The notes below the pieces were generated by a model. That model had not been told where the DNA came from and ran no database searches. It was given only the letters and a program-made list of their open reading frames with translations. A DNA stretch of 64,000 nt from positions 6,944,001 through 7,008,000 of the forward strand of contig OZ249445.1 in the NCBI GenBank assembly GCA_965235115.1, written 5' to 3'. Within the stretch, counting starts at the first letter, position 1. Each line of letters opens with the position of its first letter. A program made the position numbers and the translations under genes. Positions 38,271 through 53,943 of the stretch are shown here, piece after piece. Origin of the DNA: Laetmonice hystrix. Lineage: Eukaryota.

Positions 38271-39503
38271 ATGTGGATCTCTTGGACTCTGTTGGCGGCC
38301 TTCCTGGTCGGAGCCCACGCGGCCAGCACGCCAGGCCCATCAACTATACGAACGGAGAAACCGTCAGGCAGGCCATCCCCGTCTTGGAAGCCATCCCCGT
38401 CTTGGGAGCCATCCCCGTCCTGGAGGCCACCCCCGTCCATGAGGCCACTCCCGACCGGGAAGCCACACCCGCCCATCGAGCCAGGCCCCCCGCCAATCGT
38501 CTTCCTCTTGCTACATAAACTACATGGTACGTATAGATCTACGCCTCAATCGACCGTATTCATGCAGTCAGATATGCTCAATCGACCGTATTCATGCAGT
38601 CAGATATGCTCAATCGACCGTATTCATGCAGTCAGATATGCTCAATCGACCGTATTCATGCAGTCAGATATGCTCAATCGACCGTATTCATGCAGGTAGA
38701 TATGTTTACGTCGTCTAACGGCCCTATTTGTACGTTGCGTGTCGACCAAGAACCTATATGGGCCTGAACGTTTTGCCAGGCCTCTTGCGACTTCGGAGAC
38801 CTGTACTTATAAAATATAAATAAAACGTTTCGATATTGTGAGGATAATGTGAATAAAAACCTATATTACGACATATACACGACAGAGCTCTCGGAGATGC
38901 TGAAACACCACGGGCACGAAATGCATCCTGTCAACTGTGTCTTCTCACCAGTGTTCGCCCCAGGAGGAGGAGGACCCAAACCGTATGTATTTGGTCTCAC
39001 AATCCATTCTCAGAGCATAGTTACAGATAGTCATGTTCCGAACGATTCAATATACAGTGGTGCTATAGCCTGACAGTGCTCCTGCCGGTGAATCACCAAT
39101 GTCCATGTACAGAGTCGCTATAGCAGGGCATAGAAGGAGGGAAGGAGTAGAATCTACGTTTATGAATTTAGAACCATCGTTGATGAAACGAACTGACTAC
39201 CCAAGTATCTATAGGTCTAACATCCATTGTTTTTCCGTCAGGCCTATGTTCATGCACGGTCCACATCATGGACCAGGTCCTCACGGTCCTCACGGTCCTC
39301 ACGGTCCTCCCGGTTTTCCCGGTCCTGTTGGTCCTGCCGGTCCTGCTGGTCCTCCAGGTCCTCCCGGTCCTCACCATCATCACCATCATCACGATCACGG
39401 TGATAGCGGGGAATCTGACTGGGAGGAAAACGATGTCGACAATTCGTTTGACAGCGACAGTTTGGATGACGGCGACAACTACGAATCGGCCAGTTCCGAG
39501 TAA
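38271..39503 (+). CDS. Secreted Pro/Trp-, His-, collagen-like and acidic low-complexity protein; 3 exons (38271-38526, 38952-38982, 39242-39503), 182 aa
   Basis: Signal peptide MWISWTLLAAFLVGAHA. Phase 1 and phase 2 GT-AG introns bridged by a 31-nt exon put exon 3 in the GPHGPHGPH frame (549 nt total). TATA upstream, AATAAA at 39602. Confidence 0.8.
38545..38704. repeat. 32-bp minisatellite, 5 copies, intronic
   Basis: ctcaatcgaccgtattcatgcagtcagatatg repeated at 38545, 38577, 38609, 38641 and 38673 (last copy slightly variant). Confidence 0.95.
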
Positions 39504-40835: not shown

Positions 40836-43124
40836 ATGGTCATCTCAGAGATTGTAAGCAAAGCGTCGACGCCAACTTCACCAAATGAACGTCCGACTAC
40901 CAAGCCGGCACCTTCCCCGTTACTTCCCATCCTTTACGTCATGGCAGCTTTCGGCATGTTTAATTTCTGCGACTGGCGGAACAGACGGAACACTTTCTGC
41001 AACATCATCATTCGCGTCACCGTCTTCGTGTTCTTTCTCACGTCGTTTGTCATGACTGTGGCGTTGGAATCAGATTGGACGAGTCGTGCTGGGGTTCAAG
41101 TAGTCTGCGTGCTAACACAACTAATGTCCATCTATTACGTCGTCTTCATGTTCGCCATGTGTATCAGAAAAAAACGCGTCATCTCTCTCCTTGCACGAAT
41201 GTCCTCTGGCTCCTCAACATTAGAGGGCCAAGGCTGCAAAGGATATGTGTGCAACACGAAGGCGGCTTGGGCAACAGCACTGTGCGTTTTAATAACATAT
41301 GTCTTACTTATTCTCCCCGTGGCTGGCTTGGGGTTCTACTTGACCTCTCAGTTCACTTTTCCACATGACATCTCTCTCGGAAATGTCAGTTCGCAGCCCA
41401 CAGAACGCCTCTCGGATACGTCCGGTATTCACATCTGTGTGCACGTGTCAGTCACGGTGGGCGTCCTTATGAACATCGTCATCACGTGTTTCTTTGTCTC
41501 TCTGTGCGGCCTCATCTTCCTCGAGCTCCGCCATCATCGACGCCACCTTCAGGGCAAACCAGGAACCTCGCATTCAGGGGACCTCTCCTTGGAGAGCAAG
41601 ATAGGAAGAGCAGAGGCGATCGTCGACCTCCTCACGTCTGCTGACGATTGTTTCGGGTGGTTCCTTGTATTTCATCTTGGATTCTCGGTTCTGATACCAT
41701 CACTGCTTATGTTTAGTCTCAGCTCAGTAGGACCTTGGACACTGACATGCGTACTGGCAGTCACATGGCTCACTACCTTTTTTGCAGCGTCCTTCAACAA
41801 CCTTCAGGTATAGGCATTCGCCGCCGAGTGATATTATAAAGAAATTGTAAACTATTTTGTTTATAAAGGTAGGCCCTAGGCTTATACGTCAAATGTAATG
41901 TCTTTCCACCTCAGATTTCTACCAAGAGTATTGGAGTTTCCATTAATTGTTCTACTGGCCCGGGATATTTAGTTTATCCCCTAAAGCTATATACAGATAG
42001 ATAGATAATTCCTTTATTTCAGAGAGGTATACCTCAGGCTGTCATGACAATGCTGTGATCATGGTAATTTGATCTGCGTATAGGTGATGTACATGGCTGA
42101 TGACCTTTGTGACGCACGAAGATGTCCAATGCTGAGATCGAAGCTCCTTTTACACGTAAGGGTCGTCTCTGTGGAGAGACAGTACCTATCAGCTTTGCTG
42201 GTATGGGATTGCGTTAAAGGTGCTATTCGTGAACAAAAATTCAATTTTTTTATTTTTTATTTTGTTGACGTTTATGTGATCCCACCTATCATGGAAATAG
42301 ATTCACAACAAAGGAAATCAAAATTTTTCATGGATAACGGCACAAATGGGGCTCTCTCAGAAGGCCTGTGGAGACCCTGACACGCCCCACCATAGGAAAT
42401 GGCTCTATCTCGGTGCGCACCGAGATAGGTTTCAAATGCTGCACACAAACTAATAGAAGGTTTATCAGGCCAATGGTATCGGTAGGAATTGTTTCTAGTA
42501 CTATGTGCACAATGTATGATAGGAGAAATGCCATTCTGTGCGAGACGAATAGCACCTTTAAAGAATGTATGTTTAGCACACGCTGTGAAACTAAACGTGC
42601 AATTATTCAAGTATAAAGCATTCTGCAGTGCTATGCCGTATGCCCTCGCCGTACAGCCGGGCACATTATCACGGCATAACACCGTCTCGACCTCGCACTG
42701 TCACATCCCCTAAGTATCTAAAGTAAATACATTAAGGCGTGTCAATTGAGGAAGACGCGACTTGTTTATTATTAGGTGGTCCTAATCTTGACGACAATTC
42801 GGTACCAAAATGTTGGTTTCCGGGCCGGCCGTATCCATCTATTACATCCAATCTACAGTCTGGCAGTAAGTGATCGCTTTGTTCTCCTTAAGTCAGTACA
42901 GTATACTAGTGAATGCCCATGAATGTTTCAACAAATATATCCCTCAAGGTTAGACCTTTAATTTGACGTGGTGAAACGCCAGCCAGAAATAAAAAATCTT
43001 TTTAATCGTGACTTTATACGTTTTCATAACATTTCAGAAATTCTCTGCGGCCATCGCTCTTCTGTTTATGTCGTTCCACCGTAGAGGGGCGATACGGGCG
43101 ATGGTAGAAAACCATTTTACCTAG
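40836..43124 (+). CDS. Gustatory receptor-like (GRL/7TMIC) gene A; exons 40836-41807, 42084-42155, 42776-42865, 43038-43124; 406 aa
   Basis: Long multi-TM first exon (PILYVMAAFGMFNF ... TCFFVSLCGLIFLELRHH) plus three short 3' exons separated by phase-0 introns; VGFRAGRIHLL resembles the GR TM7a segment. Confidence 0.75.
42218..42557. mobile_element. Kolobok-like MITE in GRL-A intron 2
   Basis: TTAA|AGGTGCTATTCGT ... ACGAATAGCACCT|TTAA: perfect 13-bp TIR starting with RR and a TTAA TSD. Confidence 0.8.
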
Positions 43125-43202
43125 ATGCGAGCTGTAACGGAAATCATCAGTACCAAAGTGGTCTACAGCAACATCAGATTGATTCTGGTTGTTCGTTTCC
43201 CC

Positions 43203-43377
43203 CAGGGCCTGGTTTCAGAAAGGTTAGCATGATCTTAACTTAAGCTCTGCTTAGCCTTTTAGGACCCCTGATTGGCTGGTCCTCTGCTGCTCAGCATCAA
43301 CCAGCCAATCAGGGGTCCTAAAAGGCTAAGCAGAGCTTAAGTTAAGATCATGCTAACCTTTCTGAAACCCGGCCCTG
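43203..43377. mobile_element. Fold-back palindromic MITE (Harbinger-like)
   Basis: 78-bp arms (1 mismatch) around a 19-nt spacer; termini CAG|GGCC...GGCC|CTG, similar to the 17979 element. Confidence 0.85.
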
Positions 43378-43872
43378 AGCACTGACGAACCAGGACGTTA
43401 TGGTTGGAGGGTGGACGTTTTAGACAATGGATCATTCGATACACATTTGCTGTGCATATATTTGTTTCACTTAGCTAAAGTGCTGGACAATTATTTGCAC
43501 GTCATGGATTTTTGATGAACATTACAATTTCAGAAATTGTTTTTGAGACTGCATGCGATGACGACGGGATTGTTTGTACGATTGAAGGGATGTAGTAAAT
43601 AAATCCACACACTTCAAAATAATGAATGACAGTAGCCTTGGCTATGCCAACTAAAAGCAGCCTGGGAGGTCATCCGCTGTTGTGAATTTATTTTTTCTGA
43701 AGGTCACCATGACCCCCAGTGCTCTTGAACATCCCCCTTGGCAACCAAATTTCCTTTTCCCCCCGATAGAACCTTCTGAATTGGCCATGCTGAGCCACAC
43801 CACTCCCTTAGTAAAATTTAAATTGTACTCCTAAACCCCCCTCCCTTTACAAAAGTCCTGGACCCGCCCCTG

Positions 43873-44045
43873 NNNNNNNNNNNNNNNNNNNNNNNNNNNN
43901 NNNNNNNNNNNNNNNNNNNNNNNNNNNNNNNNNNNNNNNNNNNNNNNNNNNNNNNNNNNNNNNNNNNNNNNNNNNNNNNNNNNNNNNNNNNNNNNNNNNN
44001 NNNNNNNNNNNNNNNNNNNNNNNNNNNNNNNNNNNNNNNNNNNNN
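43873..44045. other. Assembly gap (173 N)
   Basis: Run of N, preceded by the right end of a CAGGGGCGGGTCC-type repeat. Confidence 0.99.
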
Positions 44046-44351
44046 TCATTGGCCGACATGGCACTTCAATAATTACCGCAGTTCTATATAATGAACCGTA
44101 CACCGACCTGCATTTCCAATAATGCGTAAATACTATATGTACATCACCATATAGCAGCACACAAAGTTATGGAGGTACAAACGGTGGATACGATTATGAG
44201 CCAATTTGTTGACAATTGGTCTATCACTGCTATATACGCAGGATTAATACGTTATTGCGGTGTTTAGACAGCCTCCCGGGACGTTAGGAACGGACAAGGT
44301 TGAAAACCAACAAAAGCAATTTAGTGATAGCACCAAATCGTGCAGAATTTC

Positions 44352-45907
44352 ATGGATACAATGTCAACTTCAGAACGAGTGATGGAGACGTCTTGGAAAA
44401 TGCTCAAGGCGGAACGCACCGGCATTAGACGGACGCCAAGTCTGTTACGTCCTATCGTCCACGTCATGGCATTCTTTGGCATGTTCAACTTTCGGCACGG
44501 AGGCTGTGGTCGGTGGGCGGTTCGGGTCTCCATATTGTATCAGCTTGCCTATCTGATATTTTTCATGGGATCTTTTGTACTTCTTGTGATTTTCTTTGAT
44601 ACCAAGGAGGACCCTGTGACTACGCTAGTTGGGACGATGTACGGAATGACCCAGCTGACATGTACCTATTACATCGGATTCACACTGTCGACCTGCGTAA
44701 GGAAGAAGGGTGTGACAGTTCTTCTACACAGAGTATACTCCGGGTTTCATAGTTTACGAGTTCGTGATGGTAAAGGTTGTGTTTGTAACACAAAGAAGGC
44801 TTGGGCGACGGTGATATGTATCTTAGTAGTCCATGGTCTAGTTACGTTTGCTGTGGCGGGGGGTGGATTCTTTATGACGGGTGTAGATTATATGGCGACA
44901 AGCCGTGCTTCATACGCCATTATTCACGTGTCTGTCACAGTTGGGGTCACCATGAACATTGTCATCACCTGTTTCTTTGTCTCTGTATGCGGCCTGATCT
45001 ACTGCGAGGTCCACCATCATCGACGTCACATCCAGGGCAAAAACAAAACCCTCCATTCAGAGGGAGAAACTCTGGATACACATATTCAGAGAGCAGAGGC
45101 GGTGGTGGACATCCTCACAACCGCAGACGATGTCTTTGATTGGTTCCTCTTTTTTCACTTTGGGTTCTCGATATTTATCATTGCTGCTTTGCTGAGTTTC
45201 TGCATAAACTTCAGCCCAGCTGTTCCTCAAGATTCTATGTTGTGGATACTGGTGCCAGTCTTCACCATAACAGGCCTGGCTTCCTTCTTCGCTGCCGGGA
45301 TTAACAATTGGCAGGTGAGACTTTGTATTAACTGACCGACAGACGCATTTATATAATCACGAATTACGAAAATAGAAAAAAAGCTTCCTTGTGGCTTTAT
45401 AAAATGTTTTATTGGATTTCACCGTCCTTCGGTACCAATCAATTATACAGGTCCTTGAACTGACAGATGACCTGTGCGACACCCGCGATAGCAACAGGGC
45501 GACCTCCAAGCTGCTTCTGAAGGTACGACTCTGCTGGGATAACAAAAAATTCAGTCTTTTCAAATTTTTCATACTGGACTGAGTCGAAGGATAGAGACGA
45601 TAAGATAAAGGACTGTTTTCAGATGGTCCTTATCCTGACGAAAATCAGAGACAAGAATGTCGGCTTCCACATTGGTTGCTTCCATTTTATCCATCCATTC
45701 TACAGTTTGGCGGTATGTATACCTGTATACCTTGAACAATATTTACGATATAGTTATGGTATTCAGAAGGTGACCAATTATCTGAAATTACTTCTGTCTC
45801 TACAAATCATGGTTGGTGGTCTCATGAATCGCTCACAGACTCAAAAACATTCACCACAAACGGAAGGAGCTGTACGCAATGTGCCTTTCGTAAAACGAAA
45901 TGGCTAA
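44352..45907 (+). CDS. GRL gene B; exons 44352-45314, 45451-45522, 45623-45712, 45767-45907; ~421 aa
   Basis: Paralog of gene A with the same 72- and 90-nt internal exons and phase-0 introns. Start could also be ATG 44361; last exon less certain. Confidence 0.75.
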
Positions 45908-46944
45908 TATTAATGAATTTTATGAATGTTTTCTGTGACTGTATATGAACAGAAATCTAACGTATTATGCATCACTTTTCAGTTCCTTGGCATTGGATTC
46001 AGCGCTCCCAATCTTATGCTTCCTGAGCAATATTCTGTTAAAAATATGTTAAATTCGACGACAGCGTCAATGTAAGGCCATGTCTTCCAGAGGGAGAGAA
46101 TGGAACATCTGAGGCTGGATGACGAATGGTGGAATTCGAAGTGGATTATTATTATATCATCTGGGTTACCTTGTGTAAGAACAGAAAATCTACATGTGCA
46201 CGCATACATGTCAGGAAATCAAATATGTGGCTAATTGCTGCAGCTGTGGGTGAAATAGTGTTCGTGGTGCAGTCGTGTTACACACGTAATCACATTTATA
46301 TCGGCTTTTTTTTCAACAAAGTGGCGGTCGATGCACATTTGGCGATGCTCCCTGGCTCATAATATACCCTAGGCCTCTATATAATTCCAAGAGCAGAGCT
46401 CCACTTAGGCCTGATGTCATTATAGATGTGGGGCAATGGAAACATGCGGGCAAAATGAGCCCAAATAACCCAGGACACCAGAGCTCTAGCTTTCGGGGGA
46501 AGCGCTGCATCATTATGTTTATTGTCTCCCTGGACAACGGCAGTAGCTGACAGCGGAGGGAGCCAGTAAAGGCAGTTAGTGTCTGCCGTTGTTAACCATT
46601 AGCCGATCTGAGTGAAATGACAGCTATAGGACTACGTAGGACAAAATATATACGGAAATAATAAATTGTGTCATCCTCTCATAATGAATAATTAAGGGAG
46701 GTGGCATTATCGTAGCAAAGAACCGAGTAGAAAGTAATGCATGTTTGGGGAATGAGCCGGATGCTGCACGCTCTCTGTGGGGATGTCACTGGTAGATCAC
46801 ACATAAGTGCTGCCATTCTGGCCATCCGTCCATTAGTCCACGGTGACGGACTGATGACTTGTTGAGGTAGGTCGACTCGGCCACCACACGTGCCAACAGA
46901 GCAACACCAGCATTGGGCAGGATTTCAAAATTACGTCTGTGAAA

Positions 46945-48933
46945 ATGTCTACATCAGAGCCAGAACTAGTTATGGAGACGTCCCAAACATCCAAGCAGGA
47001 ACGCCCCAGCATACGACGGACGCCACGTCCCTTACGTCCAATTGTCTACGTCATGGCGTTCTTTGGCATGTTCAACTTCCGTCATGGACGTTGCGGTCCG
47101 TCCAGTCTGTGTTTCTCCATTTTCATTCAGTTCTCCTACTTGGTATTTTTTGTGACATCGTTAATATTGGTTGCATCTACTTTCGAACACGATGGTACTA
47201 CTTTCAATCTTTTGGTTCAAATCATGTACGGTCTGTTACTACTAGCGTCGATCGTCAACGTCTTATTCATGTTTGTTACATGTATCAGAAAGAAGGGAGT
47301 GACTGTCCTCCTTGCACGAATATATTCTGGGTTTCCTGGACTGAGAGAACAAGATGGAATCAAAGGTGTGTGCAACACAAAGAAGGCTTGGGCGATAACG
47401 GTAGGCATCTTCGTAATACATGGTCTGCTAATTATTGTTGTGGCTGGCGTTGGTTTCTATGGGATTTCCTTCGGTACCATGTCACCGGTCCTTGTGCACG
47501 TGTCAGTCACGGTGGGCGTCCTTATGAACATCGTCATCACGTGTTTCTTTGTGTCTTTGTGCGGCCTCATCTTCCTCGAGCTCCGCCATCATCGACGTCA
47601 AATCAAGGCTGAACACCAAACTCAAAGTTCTGAGGAAGAGTGTCTTGGAAATCAACCAGCCTGGGAGGAAAACTGTCTTGAAAATCAAATTCAACGAGCA
47701 GAAGCGGTTGTGGACATCCTCACAACTGCAGATGGTATCTTTGGGTGGTTCCTCGTCGTCCACCTTGGGCTCTCGCTAGTAGTAGCTGGTATCATAAGTT
47801 ATTTCGGGGCAAAAGACTTCGATATATTGATAGATTCTACCATGTGGGTACTGGTGCCAACCCTCGCCGTAACAGGGATAATGAGTTTCTCCTCTGCTGG
47901 GATCAACAACCATCAGGTATGTCCCTCTCCTGCATTATCACGAGGCCAGGTTACATGTAACAAGTTACACGTAACTACGGTTTCCTATTATATCTTACTG
48001 TTGTATGGAGATACTTTCAAGGAGAACAGTTGCTTTTCACACGTCTTTTCGTTTTTTTCTAAATTCGTAAATGAATATAGGCATAACTTAGAAGTTCCTC
48101 TGTGTTGAAAACGGGACCGTAAGCTATCCAACATTTTCAAAAGCATGCACATGTAGATACCGACTTTTCTAACCCACTGTTCATTCATCCATGTCGAGTT
48201 CATTATCAGGTACTGAACCTTGCTGATGACCTCTGCGACACCCGCAATAGTCGTATGGTGACGTCGGAGCTATTCCTTAAGGTAGGCCTATATAGACATG
48301 CTTATCTTCAGGACTTGCTTAGATTTAATGGTCCTGTACAGCCTTCTTGGAGTCTCCGGAAATCTTCTCCATGTGTAAAAAGGGGCAGATGGATTGAATT
48401 TGAACTTTTTTTCATCAGGTGCTTCTAATCTTGACGAAGATCAGGGACAAGAATGTCGGATTCCGGATTGGCAGTTTCTTTTTTATCAGCCCCATCCTCA
48501 GTTTCCTGGTACATGTACATCATCTTGATTCATGCTAACAACTGAAATAATAACTATTTCAAGATGTACAGCCGAGGGTTGTTCATCCGTACTTTTAAAT
48601 GTGTTTTTCCGTCCTCGTAAAGCTAAATGTACACAGAAAAACACATGTATTTGCTTAAAGTCGGAATCTATAAATATCAACACATTAAAACCCCTAAAGT
48701 ACATAATCCCGGTATAAAAGATGCCTTTTCATGGAGCTATCAAACTTCAAAAGGTCTAAGGAAAAGTTATAATGTATTTGAAAATACAATGCTGTTGTTC
48801 ACTGGCTATATTGTGCAATAAATGTACGAAGATGTCCTAGCCGATAAAAATCTTTCTATAACACCTGATATATTTGCAGTACCTTGGAGTTCTCGTCATC
48901 GCTCCAGTGATTCTCCTTTTTATGTTTCTTTAA
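46945..48933 (+). CDS. GRL gene C; exons 46945-47916, 48210-48281, 48419-48508, 48880-48933; 395 aa
   Basis: Same architecture; exon 3 VLLILTKIRDKNVGFRIGSFFFISPILSFL; last exon YLGVLVIAPVILLFMFL*. Confidence 0.75.
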
Positions 48934-49765
48934 CATCATTCGTTTGTGCACATGGACGCGAGATATCGCCGGGCGCGGAGATGTATCGTGGAATTTGTTA
49001 AAGTCGGAACAAATTGTACCAGGAACAATTAACGATTATAGATCTAGATAGTGAATACATGGTACAGAGGAGGACTTGGTGACCGTAGGGAGAGGGGCAG
49101 GTTGGGGTATGGCGGTGGTGTCAAACCACGCCCTGCCGGTGTATATAAACGCTATGTGGTATGCCAGTATGTCATATTAAGTACCACGTGACACACATGG
49201 TAAGGTTTTCTAATTCCTCTTAGCGTCTGATAGCAATTTTGTGCACCATATGTGTACAATATAGTATTATTGGCCTATATCCCACCGTAAACCGTCAGTG
49301 ATGCCAAGTTATAGGGAACAGATGAATTTTCTCCAATGGTGGAGGCTATTTTGCATAATATGCAAATTATATTCAAATTATAAATTTGCAAATGTGCCTA
49401 TCATGTCCACTGACCATTAAAGAATGGGTTTGGATACTTGATTTGTTTCAGTTATGTCCTTCGATGCACAGTTATAGGGAAAATATAAATGTTCTCTTAT
49501 GGCGGAAGCTACATTTCATATTATGCAAATTTGACCTATTTCCCATACTCGGATTTCTTACGACTTTTAGTATGGTGTTTAGGTGACCATACTGAAATGC
49601 ACTGCAGTGAAAACAATTCTGTTGCAATTTGTGGTGGGTGAAGGTACTACTTTGACTGAACTAATACGACTCTCTGCTGGGATAACATAAAATTCAGTCT
49701 TTTCAAATGTTTCATACTGAACTGAGTCGAAGGCTAGAGACGATACGATAAAGGACTGTTTTCAG

Positions 49766-50050
49766 ATGGTCCTTATCCTGACGAAAATCAGAGACAAGAA
49801 TGTCGGCTTCCGCATTGGTTGCTTCCATTTTATCTATCCATTCTACAGTTTGGCGGTATGTATACCTGTATACCTTGAACAATATTTACGATATAGTTAT
49901 GTTATTCAGAAGGTGACCAATTATCTGAAATTACTTCTGTCTCTACAAATCATGGTTGGTGGTCTCATGAATCGCTCACAGACTCAAAAACATTCACCAC
50001 AAACGGAAGGAGCTGTACGCAATGTGCCTTTCGTAAAACGAAATGGCTAA
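49766..50050 (+). pseudogene. Orphan copy of GRL-B exons 3 (49766-49855) and 4 (49910-50050), with no exons 1-2
   Basis: Near-identical to 45623-45907 with intact splice sites and open frame; the duplication starts inside GRL-B intron 2. Confidence 0.75.
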
Positions 50051-51087
50051 TATTTATGAATTTTATGAATGTTTTCTGTGACTGTATATGAACAGAAATC
50101 TAACGTATAATGCATCACTTTTCAGTTCCTTGGCATTGGATTCAGCGCTTCGAATTTTATGCTTCCTAAGCAATATTCTGTTAAAAATATGTTAAATTCG
50201 ACGACAGCGTCAATGTAAGGCCATGTCTTCCAGACGGAGAGAATGGAACATCTGAGGCTGGATGACGAATGTTGGAATTCGAAGTGGATTATTATTATAT
50301 CATCTGGGTTACCTTGTGTAAGAACAGAAAATCCACATGTGCACGCATACATGTCAGGAAATCAAATATGTGGCTAATTGCTGCAGCTGTGGGTGAAATA
50401 GTGTTCGTGGTGCAGTCGTGTTACACGCGTAATCACATTTATATCGGCTTTTTTTCAACAAAGTGGCGGTCGATGCACATTTGGCGATGCTCCCAGGCTC
50501 ATAATATACCCTAGGCCTCTATATAATTCCAAGAGCAGAGCTCCACTTAGGCCTGATGCCATTACAGATGTGGGGCAATGGAAACATGCGGGCAAAATGA
50601 GGCCAAATAACCCAGGACACCAGAGCTCTAGCTTTCGGGGGAAGCGCTGCATCATTATGTTTATTGTCTCCCTGGACAACGGCACTTGCTGACAAAGGAG
50701 GGAGCCAGTAAAGGCAGTTAGTGTCTGCCGTTGTTAACCATTAACCGAAATGACAGCTGTAGAACTACGTAGGACAAAATATATAATATACGGAAATAAT
50801 AGATTGTGTCATTCTCTTTTTTATAATGAATAATGGATGATTAAGGGAGGTGACATTATCGTACGAAAGAACTGAGTAGAAAGTAATGCGTGTTTGGGGA
50901 ATGAGCCGGATGCTGCACGCTCTCTGTGGGGATGTCACTGGTAGATCACACATATAAGTGCTGCCATTCTGGCCATTCGTCCACCGTGACGTACTGATGA
51001 CTTGTTGAGGTAGGTCGACTCGGCCACCACACGTGCCAACAGAGCAACACCCGCATCGGGCAGGATTTCAAAATTACTTCTGTGAAA

Positions 51088-53159
51088 ATGTCTACATCAG
51101 AGCCAGAACTAGTTATGGAGACGTCCCAAACATCCAAGCAGGAACGCCCCAGCATACGACGGACGCCACGTCCCTTACGTCCAATTGTCTACGTCATGGC
51201 GTTCTTTGGCATGTTCAACTTCCGTCATGGACGTTGCGGTCCGTCCAGTCTGTGTTTCTCCATTTTCATTCAGTTCTCCTACTTGGTATTTTTTGTGACA
51301 TCGTTAATATTGGTTGCATCTACTTTCGAACACGATGGTACTACTTTCAGTCATTTGGTCCAAATCAGTTACGGTCTGGTACTACTGGCGTCGATCGTCA
51401 ACGTCTTATTCATGTTTGTTACATGTATCAGAAAGAAGGGAGCGACTGTCCTCCTTGCACGAATATATTCTGGGTTTCCTGGACTGAGAGAACAAGATGG
51501 AATCAAAGGTGTGTGCAACACAAAGAAGGCTTGGGCGATAACGGTAGGCATCTTCGTAATACATGGTCTGCTAATTATTGTTGTGGCTGGCGTTGGTTTC
51601 TATGGGATTTCCTTCGGTACCATGTCACCGGTCCTTGTGCACGTGTCAGTCACGGTGGGAGTCCTTATGAACATCGTCATCACGTGTTTCTTTGTGTCTT
51701 TGTGCGGCCTCATCTTCCTCGAGCTCCGCCATCATCGACGTCAAATCAAGGCTGGACACCAAACTCAAAGTTCTGAGGAAGAGTGTCTTGGAAATCAACC
51801 AGCCTGGGAGGAAAACTGTCTTGAAAATCAAATTCAACGAGCAGAAGCGGTTGTGGACATCCTCACAACTGCAGATGGTATCTTTGGGTGGTTCCTCGTT
51901 GTCCACCTTGGGCTCTCGCTAGTAGTAGCTGGTATCATAAGTTATTTCGGGGCAAAAGACTTTGATATATTGATAGATTCTACCATGTGGGTACTGGTGC
52001 CAACCCTCGCCGTAACAGGGATAATGAGTTTCTCCTCTGCTGGGATCAACAACCATCAGGTATGTCCCTCTCCTGCATTATCACGAGGCCAGGTTACATG
52101 TAATAAATTACACGTAACTACGGTTTCCTATTATATCTTACTGTTGTACTGAGATACTTTCAAGGAGAACAGTTGCTTTTCACACGTCTTTTCGTTTTTT
52201 TTCTAAATTCGTAAATGAATCCAGGCATAACTTTAGAAGTTCCTCTGTGTTGAAAACGGGACCGTAAGCTATCCAGCATTTTTAAAAGCATGCACATGTA
52301 GATCCCGACTTTTCTAACCTTCATACTGTTCATTCATCCATGCATCTGTCGAGTTCATTATCAGGTACTGAACCTTGCTGATGACCTCTGCGACACCCGC
52401 AATAGTCGTATGGTGACGTCGGAGCTATTCCTTAAGGTAGGCCTATATAGACATGCTTATCTTCAGGACTTGCTTAGATTTAATGGTCCTGTACAGCCTT
52501 CTTAGAGTCTCCGGAAATCTTCTCCATGTGGAAAAAGGGGCAGATGGATTGAATTTGAACTTTTTTTCATCAGGTGCTTCTAATCTTGACGAAGATCAGG
52601 GACAAGAATGTCGGATTCCGGATTGGCAGTTTCTTTTTTATCAGCCCCATCCTCAGTTTCCTGGTACATGTACATCATCTTGATTCATGCTAACAACTGA
52701 AATAATAACTATTTCAAGATGTACAGCCGAGGGTTGTTCATCCGTACTTTTAAATGTGTTTTTCCGTCCTCGTAAAGCTAAATGTACACAGAAAAACACA
52801 TGTATTTGCTTAAAGTCGGAATCTATAAATATCAACACATTAAAACCCCTAAAGTACATAATCCCGGTATAAAAGATGCCTTTTCATGGAGCTATCAAAC
52901 TTCAAAAGGTCTAAGGAAAAGTTATAATATATTTGAAAATACAATGCTGTTGTTCACCGGCTATAATGTACATTAAGTGTACGAAGATGTCCTAGCCGAT
53001 AAAATAGAACTCTTGCTATAACACCTGATCTATTTGCAGTACCTTGGAGTTCTCGTCATCGCTCCAGTGATTCTCCTTTTTGTGTTGTTAACATCATTCG
53101 TTTGTGAAAATGGACGCGAGATTTCGCCGGGCGCGGAGATATATCATGGAATTTGTTAA
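51088..53159 (+). CDS. GRL gene D (duplicate of C); exons 51088-52059, 52365-52436, 52574-52663, 53040-53159; 417 aa
   Basis: Six amino-acid differences from C in exon 1; last exon YLGVLVIAPVILLFVLLTSFVCENGREISPGAEIYHGIC*. Confidence 0.75.
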
Positions 53160-53943
53160 AGTAGGAACAAATTGTACCAGGAACTCTCATAAATTATAGA
53201 TCTAGATATTGAATACATGGTACAGAGGAGTACTTGGTGACCGTAGGGAGAGGGGCAGGTTGGGGTATGGCGGTGGTGTCAAACCACGCTCTGCCGGTGT
53301 ATATAAACGCTATGTGGTATGCCAGTATGTTATATTAAGTACCACGTGACACACATGGTGAGGTTTTCTAATTCCTCTTAGCGTCTGAGAACAATTTTGT
53401 GCACCATATTGTGTACAATATAGTATTATCGGCCTATATCCCACCGTAAGCCGTCAGTGTGTTTGATCAAATGATATTGGAATATTTACGACTACATCAT
53501 GCGGTGTGACTGTGTGTGTATCTATCAGCAGTATGGGACAGGACCCTCACATACAAACCATTTAGTGACTCGGGCAACAAAACATATTGGATGCATGAGG
53601 AGAACGCCGAGTTCCCCCGTTTCTTTTCGTATACTTGTATGTGAATACAAAATGTATATAAAAACAATAATAATGCCAGTAATAATGCCAGACTCTTATA
53701 AACCACAACACGAGGCTGGAACCTGTAAGAGTCCTATATATACATACACCAGTATATTATAAGGGTATGTTAATCGGTAATGTTGTTAGTATACATCAAA
53801 TATTTGACATCTATAACCAATATCGTATGAACTGTAATATGATTGTATGTAGTTTGTGTTAAAACTATTAATTAATACATACTGCTAATACATTCGTATA
53901 ATTTTCTCAAACTCAAAATATGCAGTCATTGTTATCGATTTCT

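What the first reader, a model, noticed from the sequence alone, without database searches (positions are those of the whole stretch)
40836..53159. Tandem cluster of four gustatory-receptor-like (7TMIC) genes
Seen: four same-strand ~395-421-aa multi-TM genes, each with one long exon plus exons of 72 and 90 nt and a terminal exon, all introns phase 0. Knowledge: three C-terminal phase-0 introns are the ancestral signature of insect GRs and non-insect Grls; Grls outside arthropods and nematodes are usually few and have no known ligands. Inference: a lineage-specific, still-expanding family of candidate ligand-gated chemosensory channels.
Basis: partly seen in the sequence, partly recalled or inferred. 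Interest (0 to 1): 0.75.

Follow-up and report, generated by a model that had tools for sequence, protein, structure and literature searches.

The report
Four tandem gustatory-receptor-like channel genes
Four neighbouring genes encode divergent relatives of insect taste and smell receptor channels; this family is already known in non-insect animals, so the cluster is real but fairly ordinary.

Summary
Four same-strand genes (406, 405, 395 and 417 aa) lie at 40836-53159. Each has one long exon, exons of 72 and 90 nt and a short terminal exon, with GT-AG introns that are all phase 0.

- **Assembly gap:** 43873-44045 lies between gene 1's stop and gene 2's start, outside every gene model.
- **Family:** Copies 3 and 4 pass Pfam 7tm_7 (51-53 bits; cut-off 26.6). 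Copies 1 and 2 fall just below it but are about 50-55% identical to copy 3 over exon 1.
- **Fold:** AlphaFold models of the exon-1 part (TM1-6) of copies 1 and 3 match only insect OR/GR/Orco structures strongly (Z 17.7-21.8; next fold 8.7-9.0). The fold is not GPCR-like.
- **Selection and duplication:** dN/dS among the older copies is 0.18-0.40. Copies 3 and 4 come from a roughly 4.1-kb tandem duplication whose exons diverged less than the non-coding DNA (1.2% vs 3.4%).
- **Departures:** The TM7 motif TYhhhhhQF is absent, although other paralogs in this genome keep it. The genome holds about 40 such loci, so the family is not small here.
- **Untested:** No RNA data exist, so expression and a chemosensory role remain inferred.

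The scan noted other arrays of this family elsewhere in the same genome (s1-349240, s1-330571). Verdict: a new, divergent subfamily of a known kind.

The parts
40836..43124 (+). GRL gene g1, 406 aa: exons 40836-41807, 42084-42155 (72 nt), 42776-42865 (90 nt), 43038-43124 (including stop)
   Evidence: ORF and splice sites. Pfam 7tm_7 scores 23.2 bits, below the cut-off. AF2 model pLDDT 73.9; matches OR/GR/Orco at Z 18.3-20.8. The terminal exon is 4 codons shorter at its 5' end than in g2-g4 and places a Lys inside TM7.
43873..44045 (.). Assembly gap (173 N) in the g1-g2 intergenic spacer
   Evidence: It lies outside all exons and introns. No GRL-like sequence abuts it.
44352..46075 (+). GRL gene g2, 405 aa: exons 44352-45314, 45451-45522, 45623-45712, 45983-46075
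   Evidence: Pfam 7tm_7 scores 23.9 bits. It is 55% identical to g3 over exon 1. dN/dS against g3 is 0.37.
46945..48933 (+). GRL gene g3, 395 aa: exons 46945-47916, 48210-48281, 48419-48508, 48880-48933
   Evidence: Pfam 7tm_7 scores 51.4 bits against a cut-off of 26.6. AF2 model pLDDT 67.5, pTM 0.67. Foldseek top 21 hits are all OR/GR/Orco. VIA Z is 17.7-21.8.
51088..53159 (+). GRL gene g4, 417 aa: exons 51088-52059, 52365-52436, 52574-52663, 53040-53159
   Evidence: Pfam 7tm_7 scores 52.6 bits. It is 98% identical to g3. It has a longer C-terminal tail than g3 because of differences at the end of the last exon.
45524..49300 (+). Duplicated unit 1: g2 exons 3-4, the intergenic spacer and all of g3
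   Evidence: Self-BLAST gives 95.9% identity to 49665-53459. Mismatches are 1.18% in CDS versus 3.36% in non-coding DNA, p=7e-5.
49665..53459 (+). Duplicated unit 2: orphan copies of g2 exons 3-4, the spacer and all of g4
49301..49664 (.). 364-nt dispersed repeat (transposon-end-like) at the junction of the two units
   Evidence: It has 52 matches in the genome at 68-100% identity, often as inverted pairs 2.5-5 kb apart. Contig depth here is very high.
49766..50218 (+). Orphan exon-3-like (49766-49855) and exon-4-like (50126-50218) copies of g2's 3' end, between g3 and g4
   Evidence: Frames and splice sites are intact. However, 6 of 180 nt differ from g2's exons, which is the neutral rate, with dN 0.036 and dS 0.027.
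41438..41545 (+). 108-nt tract in g1 (TM4) that is 97% identical to g3 47493-47600 and 96% to g4 51636-51743: a gene-conversion tract
   Evidence: 6 differences g1-g3 against 19-20 for g1-g2 and g2-g3 in a comparable, motif-anchored 108 nt. Contigs of the public runs join g1 sequence to this tract (loose ends).

Best explanation
The stretch holds four tandem, intact genes of the gustatory-receptor-like (GRL) branch of the seven-transmembrane ion-channel (7TMIC) superfamily. That superfamily includes insect GRs, ORs and Orco.

Shown here:
- homology to Pfam 7tm_7;
- a predicted OR/GR-type fold for TM1-6;
- an N-in topology by the positive-inside rule;
- purifying selection on all exons;
- growth of the cluster by tandem duplication (g3/g4 most recently) with gene conversion between copies.

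Inferred:
- Each protein is a subunit of a tetrameric ligand-gated cation channel, with a ligand pocket in the outer half of its helix bundle, a central pore lined by TM7b, and a cytoplasmic anchor made by the long TM4/TM5 extensions and TM7a.
- The cluster most likely serves chemoreception.

The four genes, with two relatives from other samples, form a separate long-branch subfamily. It has lost the TYhhhhhQF motif of TM7 and has an unusually variable pore helix.
For: - **Pfam:** 7tm_7 scores 51-53 bits for g3/g4 and 23-24 bits for g1/g2.
- **Fold:** Foldseek against the PDB gives 21 top hits that are all OR/GR/Orco (TMq 0.52-0.69), then a drop to 0.24; the best GPCR scores 0.13. VIA-align gives Z 17.7-21.8 for g3 and 18.3-20.8 for g1, with the next fold (Otop) at 8.7-9.0. 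AlphaFold DB hits are GRs and ORs, including C. elegans GUR-3, LITE-1 and EGL-47.
- **Topology:** 25 Lys+Arg lie in the predicted cytoplasmic segments and 0 in the three outer loops. N-glycosylation sequons occur in the TM3-TM4 loop of g1 and P0001.
- **Introns:** All are phase 0. The 90-nt exon and the 'six codons before the motif' position are shared with the canonical paralog L009, which has TYFVVLLQF (PMC2680840, PMC9998090).
- **Selection:** dN/dS is 0.18-0.40 for the whole CDS and 0.12-0.27 for exons 2+3. g3/g4 exons diverged 1.18% against 3.36% for non-coding DNA, p=7e-5.
- **Tree:** The four genes plus P0001 and P0002 form a clade (SH-aLRT 99, stem 1.7 changes per site) apart from 27 other GRL loci.
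Against: - No RNA run holds the stretch, so expression, splicing and tissue are untested.
- TM7 was not in the folded models, because a spliced protein has no reference that I could hand in.
- The TM7 motif is absent: IAPVILLFM in g3/g4 where the paralog L009 has TYFVVLLQF.
- g1 has a Lys inside TM7 and a positively charged C-tail. g2's TM7 is only weakly hydrophobic.
- Non-arthropod GRLs with known roles are not all chemoreceptors (from papers and my own knowledge: the Nematostella GRL in body patterning; C. elegans LITE-1 and GUR-3 in light/peroxide sensing).
- Public contigs could not separate a true g3/g4 duplication from two haplotypes laid in tandem.
Confidence: 0.72

Rival explanations
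1. The genes are true GRL/7TMIC genes but have a non-chemosensory role. Examples would be developmental signalling, light or oxidant sensing, or an internal channel. Alternatively they are accessory subunits that do not form a pore on their own.
For: The pore/gate motif TYhhhhhQF is lost, and TM7 is the least conserved part: over the first 13 residues of exon 4, 0/13 (g1 vs the others) to 5/13 (g2 vs g3) residues are identical. TM4 and the HHRR boundary are invariant. Structural neighbours include LITE-1, GUR-3 and EGL-47. PMC7746228 notes that divergence from the motif may mean different assembly and biophysics.
Against: Tandem duplication, gene conversion and clustered amino-acid changes at the outer end of TM2 between g3 and g4 are typical of environment-facing receptor families. 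Many accepted GRs also lack the motif (PMC5203786).
Confidence: 0.17
2. One or more copies are decaying or silent. The candidates are g1, with its altered TM7, and g3, with its shortened tail. In that case the cluster holds fewer working genes than four.
For: g1's terminal exon is 4 codons shorter, puts a Lys in TM7 and has a basic tail. g3 ends 22 residues earlier than g4. There is no expression evidence. The orphan exons show that relics persist here with intact frames.
Against: All four have intact frames and splice sites. dN/dS of g1 against the others is 0.18-0.29. g3/g4 exons are more conserved than their introns.
Confidence: 0.12
3. g3 and g4 are not two genes but two haplotypes of one locus, placed in tandem by the assembler. 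The cluster then has three genes.
For: Divergence of 1-4% is within the heterozygosity of many marine invertebrates. Copy-specific contigs have about half the depth of shared ones, which fits either reading. The 'other letters' on g3 contigs are the g4 bases and vice versa.
Against: The two units have sharp ends and are separated by a 364-nt dispersed repeat that is homologous to neither flank. There is no gap at the junction. The flanks of unit 2 do not repeat the flanks of unit 1, as overlapping haplotypes would.
Confidence: 0.1
4. The proteins are GPCR-like or have another seven-helix fold rather than 7TMIC.
For: None found, beyond the helix count.
Against: The best GPCR in Foldseek has TMq 0.13, against 0.52-0.69 for OR/GR/Orco. 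VIA Z of about 20 is restricted to OR/GR/Orco. The charge distribution gives an N-in topology, opposite to GPCRs.
Confidence: 0.01

Closest known systems
Insect gustatory receptors (e.g. BmGr9, DmGr43a, DmGr64a; Pfam 7tm_7 PF08395)
   Same: Pfam 7tm_7 homology. The same predicted fold over TM1-6, with Z 18.4-19.8 and 273-288 residues aligned. N-in topology. Three C-terminal phase-0 introns, the last six codons before the TM7-motif position (PMC2680840).
   Different: Only 7-12% identity in the structural alignments. The TYhhhhhQF motif is absent. The TM7 sequence is highly variable between copies. No ligand, expression or channel data exist.
Insect odorant receptors and Orco (6C70, 7LIC, 8V00, 8Z9A; Pfam 7tm_6)
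   Same: They are the best structural matches: Z up to 21.8 and TMq up to 0.69. There is a weak 7tm_6 hit of 20-24 bits and a weak profile hit to AgamOR28, E 0.007.
   Different: ORs are an insect-specific offshoot of GRs. These genes score below the 7tm_6 cut-off and keep the GR-type intron pattern.
Canonical GRL paralogs of the same genome (e.g. L009/L012 on C21; L008, L010, L011, L013 on C5)
   Same: [quoted passage not shown]
   Different: The paralog checked for this, L009, keeps TYFVVLLQF. In L007, L009 and L012 exon 2 is a 69-nt candidate rather than 72 nt. They share only 10-15% identity with g3. The window's genes sit on a separate long branch.
Published non-arthropod GRLs (annelid GRLs of Capitella and spionids; C. 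elegans GUR-3/LITE-1/EGL-47; cnidarian GRLs)
   Same: The same superfamily in non-insect animals. Annelid GRLs are reported: 12 in the first annelid genomes (PMC6223215) and 2 per spionid genome (PMC11730519). C. elegans members are structural neighbours.
   Different: The spionid GRLs keep the TM7 motif (PMC11730519), whereas these do not. Two of the four window genes and both outside relatives fall below Pfam's cut-off. The repertoire here is about 40 loci. That this genome is an annelid rests on other agents' notes and was not tested here.

Membership tests
GR/GRL family (Pfam 7tm_7; criteria of Robertson 2015 as listed in PMC5203786) | Sequence homology to the 7tm_7 signature domain | tested here: met
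   g3 scores 51.4 bits and g4 52.6 bits against a cut-off of 26.6. g1 (23.2) and g2 (23.9) are below the cut-off but are about 50% and 55% identical to g3 over the whole of exon 1.
GR/GRL family | Seven transmembrane helices with an intracellular N-terminus | tested here: met
   Hydropathy and AF2 helices give TM1-6 in exon 1 and TM7 across exons 3/4. K+R count is 25 in the predicted inner segments and 0 in the outer loops. Sequons occur in the TM3-TM4 loop of g1 and P0001. This is prediction only. g2's TM7 is weakly hydrophobic.
GR/GRL family | [quoted passage not shown] | tested here: met
   There are three phase-0 introns in all four genes. The 90-nt exon and the six-codon offset match paralog L009, whose last exon reads LIGMLI-TYFVVLLQF (PMC2680840). 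g1's last exon is 4 codons shorter at its start.
GR/GRL family | TM7 motif TYhhhhhQF (characteristic, but stated in the literature to be often divergent and not universal) | tested here: not met
   At the motif position g3/g4 read IAPVILLFM and g2 reads SAPNLMLPE. In g1, AIALLFMSF by my reading of the gapped alignment. PMC5203786 and PMC9998090 describe accepted GRs that lack the motif or carry a variant, so I do not treat this as excluding membership.
7TMIC superfamily (OR/GR/Orco fold) | OR/GR-type helix bundle with long cytoplasmic extensions of TM4 and TM5 (anchor domain) | tested here: met
   For g3, Z is 17.7-21.8 with 245-293 residues aligned. For g1, Z is 18.3-20.8. The next fold scores 8.7-9.0. 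Helices 181-230 and 238-290 in the g3 model are the long TM4/TM5 helices. TM7a/TM7b were not modelled.
7TMIC superfamily | Tetrameric assembly with a central pore lined by TM7b, gated by a ligand | not testable with these tools
   The full-length spliced protein could not be handed to the folding tools. Four copies of the exon-1 part exceed the complex tool's size limit and lack TM7. There are no functional data.
Rhodopsin-like and other GPCRs | GPCR seven-helix fold with an extracellular N-terminus | tested here: not met
   The best GPCR chain has TMq 0.13. There are no GPCR Pfam hits. The charge distribution indicates an N-in topology.

The most novel reading that the evidence does not exclude
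This long-branch subfamily has lost the TY...QF subunit-interface and gate motif. Its pore helix is hypervariable, and in g1 it carries a Lys. In contrast, TM4 and the HHRR membrane boundary are invariant. Such a subfamily may be a 7TMIC whose pore, gating or assembly differs from insect GRs/ORs. Possibilities are an obligate partner subunit, altered ion selectivity, or a non-ligand-gated sensor. It is also largely invisible to standard annotation: four of its six known members fail Pfam.
Probability: 0.15. Interest if true: 0.6.

Novelty: new member of a known kind. Interest (0 to 1): 0.3.

Why it matters
GRLs outside arthropods and nematodes have almost no assigned ligands or physiology. This cluster adds a clean, compact set of closely related genes: a 98% identical pair plus copies about 50-55% identical. 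Their differences concentrate at the outer end of TM2 and in the pore helix, which suits chimera and mutagenesis work on ligand pocket and pore in a non-insect 7TMIC.

It also shows that this probably annelid genome holds about 40 GRL loci. Published annelid surveys reported 2 to 12, and part of this family falls below Pfam's cut-off, so GRL counts in spiralians are likely underestimates.

The finding does not change how the family is understood.

Tried and rejected
- **Word-indexed protein search:** The search for homologous proteins with g3 exon 1, and then with the 13-sequence alignment, returned no hits. This says little, because the exhaustive profile search did find relatives.
- **Exhaustive profile search:** The search of 1.84 billion representatives returned three hits. 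P0001 (233 bits) and P0002 (64 bits) are relatives. P0003 looks spurious: 158 aa, low complexity, E 6e-4.
- **DNA of the relatives:** DNA around P0001 could not be fetched because the file was too large. P0002's contigs end about 200 nt after exon 1, so its downstream exons could not be checked.
- **RNA evidence:** None. The only runs holding the stretch are DNA contigs of one sample.
- **Read laying:** I used it to test the g3/g4 duplication. Contigs are short mosaics of the two copies, and the depth fits both a true duplication and haplotypes. It is not decisive, and only one call is allowed.
- **Full-length folding and tetramer prediction:** Not done.
- **PDB sequence profile search:** It gave only a weak OR28 hit, E 0.007.
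- **GPCR reading:** Rejected on fold and topology.
- **Orphan exon cassette as a working alternative 3' end of g3:** Considered unlikely, because it diverges at the neutral rate with dN about equal to dS. It cannot be excluded without RNA.
- **Organism identity:** Not tested. 'Annelid' comes from other agents' notes.


Full report
**Observation**

The region holds four long + strand ORFs, at 40836, 44340, 46939 and 51082. Each runs to a GT donor placed directly after a conserved NN[L/W/H]Q.

I scanned downstream for open exons of exactly 72 and 90 nt bounded by AG and GT. For each gene this gave one conserved pair: VL.L.DDLCD.R... for the 72-nt exon and V.LILTKIR..NVGF... for the 90-nt exon. 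Each pair is followed by a short terminal exon behind a pyrimidine-rich acceptor.

The resulting models are:
- g1: 40836-41807 | 42084-42155 | 42776-42865 | 43038-43124 (406 aa)
- g2: 44352-45314 | 45451-45522 | 45623-45712 | 45983-46075 (405 aa)
- g3: 46945-47916 | 48210-48281 | 48419-48508 | 48880-48933 (395 aa)
- g4: 51088-52059 | 52365-52436 | 52574-52663 | 53040-53159 (417 aa)

None has an internal stop. All introns are GT-AG, 100-620 nt long and phase 0.

**The assembly gap**

The N run 43873-44045 starts 748 nt after g1's stop and ends 306 nt before g2's ATG. g2's reading frame is closed by a stop between the gap and its start codon. tblastn with the four proteins finds no GRL-like sequence next to the gap.

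The gap therefore interrupts no gene model. What it hides, and its true length, are unknown. It could hold part of g2's promoter or more DNA. I did not try to fill it.

**Are these real genes?**

- Exon-1 identities to g3 are 98% for g4, 55% for g2 and 50% for g1.
- Whole-CDS dN/dS among g1, g2 and g3 is 0.18-0.40, with dS of 0.9-2.7.
- For the two small exons alone, dN/dS is 0.12-0.27, so they are coding exons and not chance frames.
- g3 and g4 lie in a tandem duplication, 45524-49300 against 49665-53459, at 95.9% identity.
- Within that duplication the g3/g4 coding exons differ at 1.18% of sites and the non-coding DNA at 3.36% (Fisher p = 7e-5). That indicates constraint since the duplication.

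**What they are**

*Sequence.* Pfam 7tm_7 (PF08395) is hit over profile positions 1-292 by g3 (51.4 bits) and g4 (52.6 bits), against a cut-off of 26.6. g1 and g2 score 23-24 bits, just below it. 7tm_6 is a weaker second hit.

*Fold.* A spliced protein has no reference, so I folded the exon-1 part (324 aa, TM1-6) of g3 and g1. The alignment had 13 sequences: the paralogs plus two outside relatives.
- The g3 model has pLDDT 67.5 and pTM 0.67. The g1 model has pLDDT 73.9 and pTM 0.74.
- Foldseek against the PDB lists 21 insect OR, GR and Orco chains first (TMq 0.52-0.69, probability 0.99-1.00). It then drops to ABC transporters at 0.24. The best GPCR has TMq 0.13.
- The Foldseek-independent search of 48,161 representatives gives Z 17.7-21.8 for g3 and 18.3-20.8 for g1. 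These scores go to the same eight OR/GR/Orco entries, over 236-293 residues. The next fold, otopetrin, scores 8.7-9.0.
- AlphaFold DB neighbours are GRs and ORs, including C. elegans GUR-3, LITE-1 and EGL-47.

*Topology.* In g3 the predicted cytoplasmic segments (N-terminus and the loops TM2-3, TM4-5 and TM6-7) hold 25 Lys+Arg. The three outer loops hold none. g1 and the relative P0001 carry N-glycosylation sequons in the TM3-TM4 loop. This fits the N-in, C-out topology of GRs.

**Introns and TM7**

[quoted passage not shown] They also state that the last lies six codons before the TYhhhhhQF motif in Daphnia, insect and nematode genes (PMC2680840).

A Pfam 7tm_7 scan of the whole genome found other GRL loci. 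Their first exons end at the same aligned column as those in the window. Five of the seven I examined have a 90-nt penultimate exon. In L009 the last exon reads LIGMLI followed by TYFVVLLQF, which is the canonical layout.

The window's genes have the same 90-nt exon and, in g2-g4, the same six-codon offset. At the motif position, however, they read IAPVILLFM (g3/g4) and SAPNLMLPE (g2). The intron signature is therefore met and the motif is not.

Other points on TM7:
- TM7 is the least conserved part of these proteins: over the first 13 residues of exon 4, g1 shares 0 with the others and g2 shares 5 with g3.
- g1's last exon is 4 codons shorter, places a Lys in the helix and is followed by a basic tail.
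- g2's TM7 is only weakly hydrophobic.
- By contrast, a TM4 block and the HHRR at its inner end are invariant in all four genes.
- PMC7746228 argues from Orco that TY lies at the subunit interface and the last motif residue at the gate. On that view divergence is compatible with a channel, but one with different assembly and biophysics.
- PMC5203786 shows large accepted GR clades without a recognisable motif.

**Family context**

- A profile of the four genes finds only these four in the 627-Mb genome.
- A broader 13-sequence profile finds 45 matches, about 40 separate loci. Many are in arrays: seven near-identical copies on C8 at 21.23-21.26 Mb, six on C7, and others on C19, C5, C21 and C20.
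- In a maximum-likelihood tree of 33 first exons, the four genes plus P0001 and P0002 form a clade. Support is SH-aLRT 99 and the stem is 1.7 changes per site, apart from the other 27 loci.
- P0001 and P0002 are the only credible hits among 1.84 billion representative proteins. They come from other samples and get no Pfam hit at all.

The subfamily is therefore older than this species, but poorly detectable.

Other follow-up agents call this genome an annelid. I did not test that. Published annelid counts are 12 GRLs in the first annelid genomes (PMC6223215) and two per spionid genome (PMC11730519). About 40 loci is therefore large for the group, though this point lies outside the finding's coordinates.

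**How the cluster grew**

- *Duplicated unit.* It begins inside g2's second intron. Unit 2 therefore carries orphan copies of g2's exons 3 and 4 (49766-49855 and 50126-50218), followed by g4.
- *Orphan exons.* They keep their frame and splice sites. They differ from g2's exons at 6 of 180 nt, which is the non-coding rate, with dN 0.036 and dS 0.027. I read them as relics rather than a working alternative 3' end of g3. Only RNA can settle this.
- *Junction.* The 364 nt between the units is a dispersed repeat with 52 matches in the genome, often in inverted pairs a few kb apart.
- *Gene conversion.* A 108-nt tract of g1 (41438-41545) is 97% identical to g3, while the surrounding sequence shows no comparable nucleotide similarity. 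In a comparable, motif-anchored 108 nt there are 6 differences between g1 and g3, against 19-20 for the other pairs. Public contigs join g1 sequence to this tract.
- *Clustered changes.* Seven of the 14 coding nucleotide differences between g3 and g4 fall in codons 88-100, at the outer end of TM2. Four of them change the amino acid. From my own knowledge, that is where OR/GR ligand pockets open. This is a lead only.

**Is the g3/g4 duplication real?**

The three public runs are DNA contigs of one sample. Copy-specific contigs lie on both copies.

Three things limit what they show. The contigs are short. Their variant letters are the other copy's bases. And the depth pattern, copy-specific about 55-60 and shared about 110-120, fits either two loci or two haplotypes.

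Against an artefact, the units have sharp ends, their flanks are not homologous, a transposon-like filler sits at the junction, and there is no gap there. I put a true duplication at about 0.9.

**Mechanism**

Shown: family, fold, topology, gene structure, selection and mode of expansion.

Inferred by homology to solved insect GR/OR channels: a tetramer, with a ligand pocket in each subunit's outer half, a TM7b pore, and an anchor domain formed by the long TM4/TM5 helices (seen in the models) together with TM7a (encoded by the 72- and 90-nt exons). A chemosensory role is the most likely use of a tandemly duplicating, converting, diversifying receptor cluster. It has no direct support here.

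**Verdict**

This is a correct first reading of a real cluster. It is a new, divergent subfamily of a known family, not a new kind of system. Interest is modest.

Noticed in passing
window 43203-43377: A 78-nt inverted repeat, 99% complementary, with a 19-nt loop: a MITE-like hairpin in the g1-g2 spacer.
   Followed up: partly
window 49301-49664: The 364-nt filler at the duplication junction is a dispersed repeat with 52 matches in the genome at 68-100% identity. Copies often form inverted pairs 2.5-5 kb apart, as the ends of a DNA transposon would.
   Followed up: partly
window 49766-49855 and 50126-50218: Orphan copies of g2's exons 3 and 4 lie behind g3, with intact frames and splice sites. 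They diverge at the neutral rate, so they are probably relics. Their use as an alternative 3' end of g3 is untested.
   Followed up: partly
window 47206-47244 vs 51349-51387 (codons 88-100 of g3/g4): Half of all coding differences between the 98%-identical g3 and g4 cluster in 13 codons at the outer end of TM2, and four change the residue. This could be local positive selection or a small conversion from an unknown source.
   Followed up: no
G000 C8:21227552-21262736 and C7:32479414-32500840: Other GRL arrays exist in the same genome: seven near-identical copies on C8 and six on C7. In total about 40 GRL loci were found.
   Followed up: partly
window 38545-38704: Two overlapping direct copies of 96 nt, 98% identical and offset by 64 nt (a short-period tandem repeat), lie upstream of the cluster. 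They are inside another finding's gene.
   Followed up: no
P0001 contig (ENA sample, 85 kb; no DNA served): The closest outside relative lies about 2.8 kb from a rhodopsin-type GPCR gene (7tm_1) and near an ankyrin-repeat gene on its contig. Its neighbours therefore differ from those in this window.
   Followed up: no
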